Assembly: GCF_011386835.1 (NCBI RefSeq)
Contig: NC_088807.1
Span: forward strand, 25,730,001-25,794,000
Source: Chrysemys picta bellii
Lineage: Eukaryota
DNA length: 64,000 bases
Direction: 5' to 3'
The position numbers and the translations under genes are program-made. Shown in pieces: positions 16,680 to 51,600 of the stretch. The notes beneath the pieces are model-generated. The model saw only the letters and a program-made list of their open reading frames with translations. It searched no databases and had not been told where the DNA came from. The stretch's first letter is position 1. Each line of letters begins with the position of its first letter.

Positions 16680-17575
16680 CTGTCACCCCCTCACCCCCTT
16701 CCCCTCCCACCCCATCCCCCTATTCCCCTCCATCCTCTTTCCCGCTTCCCCTCCCCCACTCACCCCCACCCCTTTCTCCATTCACCCCTCCATCCTCTTT
16801 CCCCCGTCACCCCAACCCCTTTCCCCGTTCACCCCCTCCCCCACTAACCCCCTCCATCCTCTTCCCCCTCAGTCACCCCAACCCCTTTCCCCATTCACAC
16901 CCTCCCCCACTCACCCCCTCCATCCTCTTCCCCCCCCCACCCCTTCCTCATTCATACCCCTCCCCCACTCATCCCCTCCATCCTCTTCCCCCCACTCACC
17001 CCCACCCCTTTCCTCATTCACCCCTCCCCCACTCATCCCCTCCATCCTCTTCCCCCCCACTCACCCCCACCCCTTTCTCATTCACCCCCCCACTCACCCC
17101 CCTCCATCCTCTTCCCCCCCACCCCTTTCCTCATTCACCCCCAATCACCCCCCTCCATCCTCTTTTCCCCCTTCCCCTCCCCCACTCACCCCACCCCTTT
17201 CCTCATTCACCCCCCCACTCACCCCCCTCCATCCTCTTTTCCCCCTTCCCCTCCCCCACTCACCCCCACCCTTTTCCTCATTCACCTCCTCCCCCACTCA
17301 TCCCCTCCATCCTCTTCCCCCCACTCACCCCATCCCTTTCCTCATTCACCCCCCACTCACCCCCCTCCATCCTCTTTTCCCCCACTGACCCCCCTCCATC
17401 CTCTTTCCCCCTTCCCCTCCCCCACTCACCCCCACCCCTTTCCTCATTCACCCCCTCCCCCACTCACCCCCTCCATCCTCTTCCCCCCCACTCACCCCCA
17501 CCCATTTCCTCATTCACCCCCTCCCCCACTCATCCCCTCCATCCTCTTTTCCCCTTCCCCTCCCCCACTCACCCC
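16680..17575. repeat. Polypyrimidine/polypurine minisatellite at the start of WNK3 intron 1
   Basis: Repeated CCCCACTCACCCCC / CCTCCATCCTCTTCCCC / CCTTTCCTCATTCACCCC. Confidence 0.9.
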
Positions 17576-17760
17576 CACCCTTCCCCCACAGGCAGGGGAG
17601 GGGCGAAGGGAGGGGGAGAGGGGGAAGGCGCGAGACGCACCGTCTCCGGCACGAGGCGCCCTGGGCAGGGGAGGGGGGGAGCGGGCGCAGTGCTCCCCGA
17701 GCTGTTGCGAGCTCGAGACTCATTGGTCCGGCCGCGGCTCCCCTCTCCCGGCCCCCCCGC
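17573..17760 (-). promoter_or_regulatory. WNK3: Probable non-coding exon 1 / CpG-rich promoter of WNK3
   Basis: CpG-dense stretch ending in a GGG|GTGAGT donor at 17573/17572 on the minus strand; CCAAT (plus strand ATTGG, about 17720); upstream ZNF143-type motif. TSS inferred, not observed. Confidence 0.6.
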
Positions 17761-48600: not shown

Positions 48601-51600
48601 AAACCCAGGGTGGTGAGTTCAATCCTTGAGGGGGCCACTTAGGGATCTGGGGCAAAAATCTGTCTGGGGATTGGCCCTGCTTTGAGCAGGGGATTGGACT
48701 AGATCCCTCCTGAGGTCCCTTCCAACCCTGATACTCTATGATTCTCCCCCCACAGCAAGCAGGTGGGGGTGGGGCCTGGGGGCGCCTCGGGGCTCTCCCC
48801 CCGCAGCAAGCAGGTGGGGCAGGGATCGGGGGCTGGCACCGGCGCCCATTGCAAAGAGGAGACTTGGGGGGTGGGGATTGGATGACAGTGGCACCCCCAG
48901 AGTGCAAACGTTTAGGGGGGCTGGAAAAGTGTACCCCCATAGCAAGTGGGTATGGAGGAGGGGGCCCATAGCAAGCAGGTTTGGGGGACTAGGATGGGGC
49001 AGTTGCTGCCAGGGGATCAGGGCTCTCCCATTCCAGAAGCAGCGACACAGGGAGGGGAGCCAGTGCCTCCCTGGCTGGGGGACGGGGGTCACCCCCTCTC
49101 CACCCCCCTAGTTTGCCTCTGCCTTGGCCGGCTTCATCGAGAGCCAGAACATCCGGGAGCTCAAGGTGTGGACCAGCCACATGAAGCGGACGATCCAGAC
49201 GGCCGAGGCCCTGCATGTGCCCTACGAGCAGTGGAAGGCGCTGAACGAGATTGACGCGGTGAGAACCCAGGTGTCCGGGCCCCCCATCCCTGCTCTAACC
49301 CACTAGATCCCCCCCTTCCCTCCCAGAGGTGGGGATGACCTCTGTAACGGTGTGGGGTGTTTCAGGGCGTCTGTGAGGAGATGTCCTATGAGGAGATCCA
49401 GGCCCATCACCCGGAGGAGTTTGCCCTGCGTGATCAAGACAAGTACCGATACCGATATCCCAAAGGGGAGGTAAGGGGGGTGCCCTGCACCCTGACTGGA
49501 GCGGGATGAAGTGGGGGGGGATTCACTTGTCAGTAACCCAGGAAACTCCCTGCCACATGATCTTGGAGGCAAATTATAGTGACAGACATAAATAACCTTT
49601 GGAACTCACTGCCACTGTGTATTTCCAGGGGGATGAATTTAGCAGCACACTCAGACTGTGGAACTCCTTGCCAGCGAGTGGTCCCAGGAGTTTAGTGATG
49701 GGTCTCCTGCCGGGGGGTATTCCTAAAGGGAATGAATTTGGCAACACACTTAGCCTGTGGAACTCCCTGCCCCATGATGCAGGGGGGCAAGTTTTTTCAC
49801 ACGCACAATGAGCCCATGGAACTTCCTGCCACTGGAGAATCTATGGGCAGATTTGGGTGATGATTGTTGTTAACCTGTGCTGGGGGTGGAGAAGGAGGAG
49901 GGAGGCAGCGTCTCTCTCATTGGCATCAGCCCCCCCCACAATTGTCCCCAGTCATACGAGGACCTGGTGCAGCGGCTGGAGCCCGTCATCATGGAGCTGG
50001 AGCGGCAGGAGAATGTGCTGGTGATCTGCCATCAGGCCGTCATGCGCTGCCTGCTGGCTTACTTCCTGGACAAGAGCGCAGGTACCCCCCCCCCCAGCTA
50101 CCTCCTCCCAGCCCCCTACCGCTCTAGCTGTAACCCCCATATCTATCGTTCATAGATGGCCGTGTAAGGTATCCGAGGAAAGGTCATGATGTGCTGAACC
50201 CCATCGTTCGGTCCAAATATGTACCTCGGTAACGTGGAAGAGGTTGAGACTTATTGAAATATGCTGTTTGTCTGGGGGTCGGCCACGGCCAGTTGTCCGG
50301 TGACCCACCCCCAGACGGGCGCTCAACGACCCTACATCAGCAAGGGGGCTGTGAGCAAGGGATTTACAGTGCTGTCAGAGGGCATCACGCTGGGGCATTG
50401 CTCTTCTCTGACACGTCTGGGCTGGTGTTTGCCAGGCCCAGGGACTGAGGGTAAAAAACAGAGGACGGGGGCATCATGCTCGGGCCTTTCTCCTCCCCGC
50501 CTACGCTGGAAGCAGCAGGAACACGGGGAAGATCGAGACTTGAACTGAGGAGACTGGCCCCAAGCTTAAGGGGGAAGCCTGCGTATGAAGGACAGTAACG
50601 TACCTGCAACGTCCAGGGGGTGAGAGAAACTGCTTGGTCCAAATCCCGCTCGGTCTAATAAGGTTTGGGACCCAGACAATGTGCTTCCCTTTTATTTTCT
50701 TTGGCGAGTCTCTGACCTTTTCTGCCTCTCCCCTTAATTCTCCAGCCCCGGACGTCTCTCACTGCTCTGCTAGTGGCAAGCAGCCGCTCCAGGCCCATGC
50801 CCCGGCCCCCCAGCAAAGGGCCACGCATGCTCTCCCAGCCGCTCACAAACAGATACAGGGCGACACTTGTGCATCCCTCAGTCCCAGCCTTGCACCCCAG
50901 AAATGTGCGGCTCACGCTGATCAGGACCCCCCTGAACAGTGCAAACGTCAGTCGTTCCATCAACGGGTAACGAACTCGCCCCTGCCTTTGTTAACCTGAG
51001 GAGAGCGCCCCCACCACGCTGGCTTAGCTAAACCGTTAAAACAAGGGCATTAACGAGAGCAGGAGAGCTGTCCAGTCACACAGGCACAAGAGTCAGAACT
51101 GGCTACCAGGATAAAAGCACCAGCTAACTCGTAAACTTTACCAAGCAAAAGGTCTCTCACCCCATAACTTTCAGCGGTCCCTGCTAAGTGGAAAGCCATC
51201 CAGTTCAGACCACTCCTCCCAGTTCACTGATGGGTTTTTGATCCCGTGTGTAGAGATGGGGGAGCAGAGGGAGCCACTCTTCTTATATCCTGACCCTTTT
51301 CACTGAAAAAGTCCCTGCCGGCTCATGGGTTCCATGGCATACGTACTCTGCAAACTGTCCTTTAGATCAACTGTCCATGCCTTTGTCTAGCCCTTCTCCC
51401 CTTCTGCTGAATGTCCAATGAGACAGGACATGGCTTTAACACTTCGCTGGCAAGCCAGTGTCTCTCTGTGCCTGGGAAATTGGCTTGTGAGTGTTGCCCA
51501 GAATTATAACACATCAGTAACAATCATATAGCCAAATCTCATAACTCCCTATACAGTGTTGATACACACATTGTAACAGGACAACGATGTTCAGCGGATT

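What the first reader, a model, noticed from the sequence alone, without database searches (positions are those of the whole stretch)
16680..48830. Recurrent splice-donor-multiplying tandem repeats: five cases in four neighbouring genes
Seen: five unrelated tandem repeats each begin at an exon 3' end, so the authentic 5' splice site is copied into the intron. Cases: WNK3 exon 1 (about 14 GTGAGT copies; exon inferred), HDAC6 DAC2 exon (6), two WDR45 exons (about 20 and 7) and PFKFB1 exon 8 (4 plus 2). The four coding-exon units also carry the exon's last bases, and the units share no sequence with each other, so this is a repeated process rather than one transposon. Established: duplicated identical donors compete, and G-runs near donors bind hnRNP H/F. 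Inference: GC-rich donor regions are slippage hotspots here. Copy number could act as a heritable dial on splicing, giving premature stops/NMD in WDR45 and HDAC6 but in-frame insertions in PFKFB1.
Basis: partly seen in the sequence, partly recalled or inferred. Interest (0 to 1): 0.78.

Follow-up and report, generated by a model that had tools for sequence, protein, structure and literature searches.

The report
Splice-donor-copying minisatellites in turtle genes
In three neighbouring turtle genes, four intron tandem repeats really do begin inside the preceding exon and so copy its splice donor many times, but this is a known and probably harmless kind of repeat, and its frequency here is what crowded short introns predict.

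Summary
Four of the five cases are confirmed. Tandem arrays start 22-43 nt inside HDAC6, WDR45 (two exons) and PFKFB1 coding exons. They repeat the exon end plus donor 6, 7, 22 and 4+2 times. The units are unrelated to each other. The fifth case (WNK3) is a G-rich array with 14 GTGAGT, but no exon is shown there. The assembly gap touches none of the arrays. It does interrupt HDAC6, whose 5' exons are missing from the window.

The kind is known. Human F7, CBS, IFI6, LMNB2 and PDGFA carry such minisatellites, and mainly the first donor is used. In 2026 the regional version was described on chicken dot chromosomes as "exon stuttering".

Here 36% of intron bases in the three genes lie in minisatellites. 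A simple placement model for the 8 locally born arrays predicts 3.6-5.1 donor-spanning ones, and 4 are seen. No donor hotspot is needed. No acceptor is copied (0 of 41).

Use of the extra donors could not be tested. The idea of a heritable splicing dial is unsupported.

This scan had already noted the same kind elsewhere in this genome (RAB13, RBM14, TMX2 and others).

The main new point is that a turtle shows stuttering in a block that includes WNK3, whose chicken orthologue lies on dot chromosome 29.

The parts
16684..17582 (-). G-rich minisatellite (about 64-bp units) with 14 GTGAGT, downstream of a CpG-rich, CCAAT-containing stretch. No exon or donor is shown.
   Evidence: TRF; sequence; 14 GTGAGT and 16 donor-like 9-mers, CpG o/e 0.53 at 17583-18000. 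The WNK3-like first coding exon lies at 2239-2800 on the minus strand.
22664..23163 (.). Assembly gap. It lies upstream of the first recognisable HDAC6 exon (23866). The HDAC6 5' exons are missing from the window.
   Evidence: Sequence. tblastn of the three first exons of the second deacetylase domain finds no paralogous first-domain exons anywhere in the window.
31209..31383 (+). HDAC6 exon, the last of the second deacetylase domain. Donor ACG|GTAAGT.
   Evidence: PDB HDAC6 chains, E = 3e-19; the alignment ends at the exon end. GT-AG table.
31341..32069 (+). HDAC6 array of 104-152-bp units, each with the last 43 nt of the exon plus GTAAGT. Donor copies start at 31384, 31536, 31687, 31787, 31891 and 32015 (the last has a 1-nt deletion in its exon part). 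An in-frame stop at 31482-31484 precedes the second donor.
38712..38920 (-). WDR45 (WIPI4) coding exon 7. Donor CTG|GTGAGA. Read-through gives TGG TGA.
   Evidence: PDB 8kbx, E = 7e-35. Spliced RNA contig piece at 38727-38919..
38040..38738 (-). WDR45 intron-7 array with units of about 35-107 bp. It holds 7 copies of ...CCACCCTGTACTG|GTGAGAGCC, with first intron bases at 38711, 38620, 38513, 38425, 38266, 38184 and 38046. Two copies have decayed donors.
37828..37929 (-). WDR45 coding exon 8. Weak donor CGC|GTAGGT. Read-through gives GCG TAG.
   Evidence: Pfam PROPPIN, E = 1.1e-5..
36879..37849 (-). WDR45 intron-8 array, a 79-bp higher-order repeat built of two 38-41-bp subunits. It holds 22 copies of CTCCGC|GTAGGTACCCCCC. 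GT is intact in 18, is AT in 3 and GC in 1. The array fills 98% of the intron.
48169..48376 (+). PFKFB1 coding exon 8, at the kinase/bisphosphatase junction. Donor CAG|GTGGGG.
   Evidence: PDB 1k6m, E = 7e-33. Pfam 6PF2K and His_Phos_1.
48340..48561 (+). PFKFB1 array of 51 bp x 4.4 at 100% identity. Each unit holds the last 37 nt of the exon plus the donor. It stays in frame (17 codons) with no stop.
   Evidence: No reads were laid here, so the copy number is unverified.
48562..48745 (+). tRNA-like, SINE-like insertion that splits one repeat unit of the PFKFB1 array.
   Evidence: Sequence read by eye. ARAGORN calls no tRNA. Single copy in the window.
48746..48825 (+). Two older, diverged copies of the PFKFB1 unit. 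Their donors start at 48763 and 48814.
46253..46482 (+). Local 49-bp array in PFKFB1 intron 3. It starts 4 nt after the exon end and does not copy the donor. It serves as a comparison case.
47141..47814 (+). Local 49-bp x 14 array that fills 86% of PFKFB1 intron 6 and does not copy the donor. It serves as a comparison case.
41582..41978 (-). Local G-rich array about 12 nt downstream of a putative WDR45 non-coding exon-1 donor (GGG|GTAACC, near 41990). It has 9 CAGGTGGGG-type donor-like motifs but is not a copy of that donor.
   Evidence: The exon 1 is inferred only.

Best explanation
These are ordinary local minisatellites whose founding tandem duplication happened to span an exon-intron junction. 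Every unit therefore carries the exon tail and the 5' splice site. They sit in a very GC-rich block (60-72% GC) whose short introns are packed with tandem repeats. This is the same syndrome described as 'sequence stuttering / exon stuttering' on chicken dot chromosomes.

A tandem duplication leaves the first copy (complete exon plus donor) intact. The extra donors then lie inside the intron. They are most likely ignored, because the most upstream donor is chosen (5'->3' scanning or exon definition, as shown for human F7).

Shown here:
- the arrays themselves and their exon content;
- that the units are independent of each other;
- that the repeats saturate the introns;
- that the count of donor-spanning arrays equals the geometric expectation.

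Inferred:
- that the copies are silent;
- that acceptor-spanning duplications are removed by selection, which would explain the 4:0 asymmetry.
For: Arrays and exon identities.

Units unrelated.

Repeat load:
- 35.7% of 17,142 intron nt lie in arrays.
- 19 of 41 introns carry an array, with a median 75% coverage of those introns.
- Arrays run from just after the donor core (+3 to +16 nt in 7 introns) to 13-56 nt before most acceptors.

Null model: 3.6-5.1 donor-spanning arrays expected among 8 local arrays, 4 observed, P(>=4) = 0.68.

Screen after Hron et al. (exon versus adjacent intron by BLASTn, bit score >= 42.1): 3 of 41 introns pass. All three are on the donor side, and the source ends exactly at the exon border.

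Unit divergence is 69-93%, and a SINE-like insertion sits inside the PFKFB1 array. Both indicate real, partly old arrays.

Independent DNA: short-read contigs from another sample and another species lie in or at both WDR45 arrays.

Literature:
- PMC1557585 describes F7, IFI6, CBS, LMNB2 and PDGFA with the same layout. Only the most upstream donor is used in F7, LMNB2 and PDGFA. IFI6 and CBS also use the first two pseudo-sites.
- PMC12954441 describes exon stuttering in 236 chicken introns, 190 of them on dot chromosomes, with PHF8 and WNK3 on chromosome 29.
Against: No junction read was obtained for any copied donor.
- The spliced WDR45 RNA contig stops 15 nt before the exon-7 donor.
- The exon-8 RNA contig is unspliced.
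So silence of the copies is not shown.

The donor 9-mer is somewhat better kept (93%) than its flanks (79-85%) across the WDR45 intron-8 units. That could hint at constraint or could come from the two-subunit structure.

About half of the intronic arrays belong to four dispersed families rather than being local. This differs from the chicken description.

The null model is conditional on the arrays seen and uses rough ancestral intron lengths. One of them (35 nt) is unrealistically short.

The 4 versus 0 donor/acceptor contrast is only P = 0.06.
Confidence: 0.7

Rival explanations
1. GC-rich donor regions are slippage hotspots, and copy number acts as a heritable dial on splicing: NMD-coupled down-tuning of WDR45 and HDAC6, and in-frame 17-residue inserts in PFKFB1.
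For: All extra donors have the authentic 9-mer in HDAC6 and PFKFB1, and most do in WDR45. The premature-stop and in-frame predictions are correct. In IFI6 and CBS the first two pseudo-sites are used as well as the authentic donor (PMC1557585). From my own knowledge, F7 intron-7 allele length has been associated with factor VII levels.
Against: No enrichment over the geometric null. In F7, LMNB2 and PDGFA only the first donor is used. Three WDR45 intron-8 copies have lost G+1 by CpG-type changes, as neutral DNA would. No spliced read to a downstream donor was seen, although the read evidence is weak.
Confidence: 0.08
2. There is a real mutational bias towards the 5' ends of introns, for example from G-rich non-template DNA, G4 or R-loop structures, or replication stress just downstream of donors. 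It has no function. Arrays are born preferentially next to donors.
For: Eleven of 19 first arrays start within -43 to +16 nt of the donor, while none comes closer than 13 nt to an acceptor. The donor-side excess is 4:0 here. In this scan's unchecked notes the ratio is roughly 8:1. Hron et al. discuss G4 and replication stress as a possible cause.
Against: The slack in these introns is so small (arrays cover 49-98% of 17 of the 19 array-bearing introns) that starts near donors are forced by geometry. The 5' constraint (about 6 nt) is simply shorter than the 3' one (branch point plus polypyrimidine tract). Hron et al. report that both donor and acceptor sides are copied in chicken.
Confidence: 0.15
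3. Assembly stutter. The arrays, or their copy numbers, are artefacts of assembling GC-rich repeats.
For: The PFKFB1 units are 100% identical. The region has a gap. There is an apparent +1 frameshift inside an HDAC6 exon near 28985-29005, which suggests homopolymer errors.
Against: Units in three arrays differ by 7-31% and show higher-order structure and decay gradients. A SINE-like element is inserted in the PFKFB1 array, with older copies beyond it. Independent contigs match inside the WDR45 arrays, for example 38156-38444 with 0 differences in run X3.
Confidence: 0.05
4. Functional U1-binding platform. Arrays of silent donors recruit U1 snRNP to protect long GC-rich pre-mRNAs from premature cleavage, or to create detained introns.
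For: There are many intact strong donors (scores 8.5-10.3) in three arrays. The donor core is the best-kept part of the WDR45 intron-8 unit. Unspliced RNA contigs lie over exon 8.
Against: The units are unrelated and of very different ages. The WDR45 intron-8 donor is weak (score 3.1). Neighbouring introns are filled by arrays with no donor-like motif at all. The introns are short and need no such protection.
Confidence: 0.05

Closest known systems
Human F7 IVS7 37-bp minisatellite, and the same layout in IFI6 (6-16), CBS IVS13, LMNB2 and PDGFA intron 4 (Borensztajn et al. 2006, PMC1557585)
   Same: The first repeat unit spans the exon-intron boundary, so the authentic donor is followed by identical pseudo-donors. 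Unit sizes are tens to about 100 bp, with 5-25 copies. The genes lie in GC-rich regions.
   Different: Those are single loci in a mammal with tested splicing outcomes and known length polymorphism. Here there are four arrays in three adjacent turtle genes within 17 kb, with up to 43 nt of exon per unit, and no test of usage or polymorphism.
'Sequence stuttering / exon stuttering' of genes on chicken dot chromosomes (Hron et al. 2026, PMC12954441)
   Same: GC-rich gene block. Introns are largely made of locally expanded repeats confined between intact exons. In a few percent of introns, exon edge fragments are copied with the adjacent splice site (3 of 41 here by their bit-score criterion, against 3.4% in chicken). 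The source ends at the exon border. Exon parts are 22-43 nt here, against a chicken median of 36. WNK3 and PHF8 map to chicken dot chromosome 29.
   Different: This is a turtle, and the authors state they did not find stuttering outside birds, apart from gerbil GC-rich genes. About half of the arrays here belong to four dispersed repeat families. Only donors are copied here. Length variation within the species was not tested.
Tandem 5' splice sites a few nucleotides apart (GYNGYN type; PMC2423196, seen only as a title and abstract)
   Same: Several competing donors follow one exon.
   Different: Those sites are a few nt apart and arise by point changes, and both are often used. Here the donors are 38-152 nt apart and arise by minisatellite expansion.

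Membership tests
Exon-junction minisatellite (F7 IVS7 type) | Head-to-tail tandem array within an intron | tested here: met
   TRF periods are 38/79, 35-107, 104-152 and 51, with 4.4 to about 21 copies.
Exon-junction minisatellite (F7 IVS7 type) | The first unit spans the exon-intron boundary, so exon tail plus donor are reiterated | tested here: met
   The arrays start 22-43 nt inside the exon. The junction 20-mers recur 4-21 times in their own intron. This is not met, or not testable, for the WNK3-side array.
Exon-junction minisatellite (F7 IVS7 type) | [quoted passage not shown] | tested here: met
   The 9-mers are identical in 6/6 HDAC6 copies, 6/6 PFKFB1 copies, 4 of the 6 WDR45 intron-7 copies scored, and most WDR45 intron-8 copies.
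Exon-junction minisatellite (F7 IVS7 type) | Only (or mainly) the most upstream donor is used | tested here: inconclusive
   The RNA contigs do not cross either WDR45 junction. The mRNA contig ends 15 nt before the exon-7 donor.
Exon-junction minisatellite (F7 IVS7 type) | Copy-number polymorphism (VNTR) | not testable with these tools
   Only short-read contigs were available and they break inside the arrays.
Sequence/exon stuttering (Hron et al. 2026) | Introns heavily covered by tandem repeats, exons intact, repeats confined to single introns | tested here: met
   35.7% of intron nt lie in arrays. 19 of 41 introns carry one, with a median 75% coverage of those. All 41 introns are GT-AG with intact flanking exons.
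Sequence/exon stuttering (Hron et al. 2026) | Repeats of local origin (unique sequence expanded in place) | tested here: inconclusive
   Eight intronic arrays are local and eleven belong to four families found at several places in the window.
Sequence/exon stuttering (Hron et al. 2026) | Exon edge fragments copied into the adjacent intron, with the source within 1 nt of the exon border and a BLASTn bit score above 42.1 | tested here: met
   3 of 41 introns pass, and the source ends at the last exon base in all three. WDR45 intron 8 falls below the score only because its exon part is about 20 nt.
Sequence/exon stuttering (Hron et al. 2026) | Extensive intron-length variation within the species | not testable with these tools
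   No long reads were available. The contigs show only small indels.
Sequence/exon stuttering (Hron et al. 2026) | Location on, or synteny with, avian dot chromosomes | tested here: inconclusive
   WNK3 and PHF8 are listed on chicken chromosome 29 in the paper's supplement. HDAC6, WDR45 and PFKFB1 are not listed there. The chromosome of the turtle window is unknown, and WNK3 lies across the gap.

The most novel reading that the evidence does not exclude
The turtle block shows the full 'sequence stuttering' syndrome so far reported only for avian dot chromosomes, and it includes WNK3, whose chicken orthologue lies on dot chromosome 29. The instability would then be older than birds, or would arise wherever a very GC-rich, recombination-prone gene block exists. 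Its strong donor-over-acceptor bias would be a natural, genome-scale readout of the 'first donor wins' rule of splice-site choice.
Probability: 0.4. Interest if true: 0.55.

Novelty: new member of a known kind. Interest (0 to 1): 0.38.

Why it matters
If the copies are silent, as in human F7, these arrays are harmless. They are still useful natural experiments. Each is a series of identical donors at graded distances from one exon, in essential genes, where mis-splicing would give a premature stop.

The regional picture matters more. A 2026 paper reports intron and exon 'stuttering' as specific to bird dot chromosomes. This window suggests the same process in a turtle, in a block containing WNK3, a gene that lies on a dot chromosome in chicken. 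That bears on when and why this instability arose, and on why such genes are hard to assemble. It also gives a testable null: the share of arrays that cross a donor should equal unit length divided by free intron length.

Tried and rejected
I rebuilt the exon table from coordinates only.
Exon-bearing stop-free frames were searched one by one, by reference.
3. Reads: one stretch (36400-42399) was laid on 2 RNA and 2 DNA runs. All of them were Logan contigs. The joint table was swamped by SINE-derived joints, so no junction evidence for the copied donors emerged.
4. ARAGORN found no tRNA in the SINE-like insert.
5. I considered the 41582-41978 array a possible sixth donor copy. I rejected this because its units do not contain the putative GGG|GTAACC donor.
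6. I considered the PFKFB1 intron-3 array, which starts at +4, as a donor copy. I rejected this because its units carry GGTGAC and not the authentic GTGAGG junction.
7. I did not run the large protein searches. Gene identity was already clear, and the length filter would exclude full-length PFKFB1 isoforms.
8. No letters were sought for the N gap.
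Full report
**Observation.** Tandem Repeats Finder reports 109 rows in the window. Reading the sequence shows that four of them begin inside a coding exon.

**Gene identity.** I checked each exon-bearing stop-free frame by reference.
- The 31209-31383 exon matches the end of the second deacetylase domain of HDAC6 (PDB 9k91/5g0h, E = 3e-19).
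- The 48169-48376 exon matches PFKFB1 (1k6m, E = 7e-33).
- The 38712-38920 exon matches WDR45/WIPI4 (8kbx, E = 7e-35).
- Pfam gives PROPPIN, 6PF2K, His_Phos_1 and Hist_deacetyl.

**Exon table.** I built the table from coordinates. It covers 21 HDAC6, 10 WDR45 and 14 PFKFB1 exons. All 41 complete introns are GT-AG. A spliced 899-nt RNA contig confirms several WDR45 junctions exactly.

**Copies of each donor.** The 20-mer across each junction (12 exon + 8 intron nt) recurs in its own intron for exactly four donors and for no acceptor.
- HDAC6 has six copies of ...GACTGGACG|GTAAGT. Five are exact and one has a 1-nt deletion.
- WDR45 exon 7 has seven copies of CTGTACTG|GTGAGA.
- WDR45 exon 8 has 22 copies of CTCCGC|GTAGGT, 18 of them with GT intact. 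They form a 79-bp two-subunit higher-order repeat.
- PFKFB1 has four identical copies of a 51-bp unit. A tRNA-like, SINE-like insertion splits one further unit. Two older copies lie beyond it.

Units carry 22-43 nt of exon. BLASTn of the units against the window shows that the five arrays share nothing with each other.

- In HDAC6 a stop lies at 31482, before the second donor.
- In WDR45 the stops TGA and TAG come directly after the junction.
- In PFKFB1 the frame stays open across the 51-nt units.

**WNK3 case.** The array at 16684-17582 holds 14 GTGAGT on the minus strand. It lies downstream of a moderately CpG-rich stretch. No exon is shown there. A different donor candidate (ACG|GTGCGT) lies 59 nt upstream of the array. 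The first WNK3-like coding exon is 15 kb away. I count this case as not confirmed.

**The gap.**
- The Ns at 22664-23163 lie between a decayed CTATAGAAACAC minisatellite and AT-rich unique DNA. They touch none of the arrays.
- The first recognisable HDAC6 exon starts at 23866.
- tblastn with the three first exons of the second deacetylase domain finds no paralogous first-domain exons anywhere in the window.
- So the 5' third of HDAC6 is missing, and the gap interrupts the gene.
- Continuity across the gap, and the WNK3-HDAC6 adjacency, are not established.
- I looked up nothing to fill the gap.

**Is it more than chance?** The block is 60-72% GC and saturated with minisatellites.
- 35.7% of the 17,142 intron bases of the three genes lie in arrays.
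- 19 of 41 introns hold one, and it covers a median 75% of those introns.
- Eleven of these arrays belong to four families seen at several places in the window. Eight are local.
- First-array starts relative to the donor are -43, -37, -27, -22, +3, +4, +6, +6, +6, +13, +16, +32 ... +248.
- Array ends stay 13-56 nt from most acceptors.

The arrays therefore fill the introns from the donor core to the branch-point and polypyrimidine region. The donor-spanning arrays are the tail of a continuum.

I then modelled a founding duplication of unit length u, placed at random. Its only constraints are to spare about 30 nt at the acceptor and not to lie inside an exon. This model predicts 3.6-5.1 donor-spanning arrays among the eight local ones, and four are seen (P(>=4) = 0.68). 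The donor versus acceptor contrast (4/41 against 0/41) gives P = 0.058. No donor-specific slippage hotspot is needed. The unusual feature is the regional repeat load.

**Reality of the arrays.** All runs that hold the stretch are kept as contigs.
- Contigs from another sample of the same species label lie inside both WDR45 arrays. One example is 38156-38444 with no differences.
- Contigs from a second species reach the array borders and break there.
- Unit divergence is 7-31%. The arrays show higher-order structure, decay towards the distal ends, and an insertion inside the PFKFB1 array.

All of this argues against assembler stutter. The exact copy number of the perfect PFKFB1 repeat is unverified. 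An apparent +1 frameshift in an HDAC6 exon shows that small errors exist in this assembly.

**Usage.** The RNA evidence is uninformative for the key question.
- The spliced WDR45 contig ends 15 nt before the exon-7 donor.
- The contig over exon 8 is unspliced at both ends.

**What is known.**
- Borensztajn et al. 2006 (PMC1557585) describe the human F7 intron-7 37-bp minisatellite, whose first unit spans the exon-intron boundary.
- They list the same layout in IFI6, CBS, LMNB2 and PDGFA.
- In F7 the pseudo-sites are functional, but only the most upstream donor is used. In IFI6 and CBS the first two pseudo-sites are also used.
- Hron et al. 2026 (PMC12954441) describe 'sequence stuttering' and 'exon stuttering' on chicken dot chromosomes.
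- There, introns are packed with locally expanded repeats. In 236 introns (190 on dot chromosomes, 3.4% of their introns) exon edges are copied with the adjacent splice site.
- PHF8 is their example on chromosome 29, and their supplement places WNK3 on chromosome 29 too.
- They state that they did not find the phenomenon in other vertebrates, apart from gerbil GC-rich genes.
- Applying their criterion here (exon against adjacent intron by BLASTn, bit score >= 42.1) gives 3 of 41 introns. All three are on the donor side, with the source ending at the last exon base.

**Earlier notes of this scan.** These are unchecked leads. They list the same kind of array elsewhere in this genome at RAB13, RBM14, TMX2, a CRAT-like gene, DMA, RNF31 and RNF214, plus one acceptor-side array at AQP14. 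Their follow-ups reached the same reading of a known kind that is probably tolerated.

**Verdict.**
- The interpretation as a repeated, independent process is right.
- The hotspot and 'splicing dial' ideas are not supported.
- The finding is a new set of members of a known kind.
- Its residual interest is that a turtle shows the regional stuttering syndrome, in a block containing a gene (WNK3) that lies on a dot chromosome in chicken, with a donor-only bias.

Noticed in passing
window 28985-29005 (inside HDAC6 exon 28913-29106, + strand): There is an apparent +1 frameshift between ...DRVGKGPG and GFTLNVPW within a run of G/C (GTGGGGAAGGGGCCGGGGCCGTGGC). This is most likely a homopolymer indel in the assembly, since the paralogous exon of the first deacetylase domain is continuous.
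   Followed up: partly
window 23164-23866 and the whole window: The N-terminal part of HDAC6 and the first exons of its first deacetylase domain are absent. The 500-N gap therefore hides several exons, or it joins contigs that are not adjacent.
   Followed up: yes
window 24890-25181, 29449-29650, 44420-45438, about 57141: An 83-84-bp G-rich repeat family forms arrays at several sites, including the 12-copy array between WDR45 and PFKFB1. In two HDAC6 introns it directly follows near-identical donors, GAG|GTACGTGGGG (24884 and 29444).
   Followed up: partly
window 3890-4618, 26489-26861, 27048-27290, 28284-28515, 32799-32970, 40916-41093, 42254-42848, 43656-43953, 47993-48121, 55922-56403, 62911-63427: A 73-77-bp repeat family (CTGGGAGCCAGGACTCCTGGGTTCTCTCC...) forms at least 12 arrays in both orientations and many single copies. 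RNA and DNA contig depth on related copies is very high (about 39400-40200 and 42200-42400).
   Followed up: partly
window 42050-42180 (- strand): This is the probable WDR45 promoter. It has a TCACGTGA (E-box/CLEAR-like) motif near 42078, YY1-like AAGATGGCTGCC and ACATGGCCGCC motifs, and a putative non-coding exon-1 donor GGG|GTAACC near 41990.
   Followed up: no
window 18024-18438 (- strand): Nine GCCATNTTGG motifs (YY1-like core) occur in a decayed repeat of about 55-60 bp, just upstream of the putative WNK3 5' region. About 1 is expected by chance in the whole window.
   Followed up: partly
window 32176-32234 (+ strand, HDAC6 exon 32174-32385): A coding 23-bp x 2.8 tandem repeat (PIREDS...-type) lies in the linker after the second deacetylase domain. 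This is the region where human HDAC6 has its own repeat (SE14), from my own knowledge.
   Followed up: no
window 60616-62736 (+ strand): Long open frames resemble a hAT or ZBED-type transposase-derived gene, by eye only. CR1-like reverse-transcriptase fragments lie at 18724-19260 and 6503-7439 on the minus strand.
   Followed up: no
window 36400-42399, RNA run X15: An RNA-library contig covers WDR45 exon 8 unspliced at both ends, and there is depth in intron 7 (38000-38199) similar to the exon depth. This could be pre-mRNA, intron retention or DNA carry-over.
   Followed up: no
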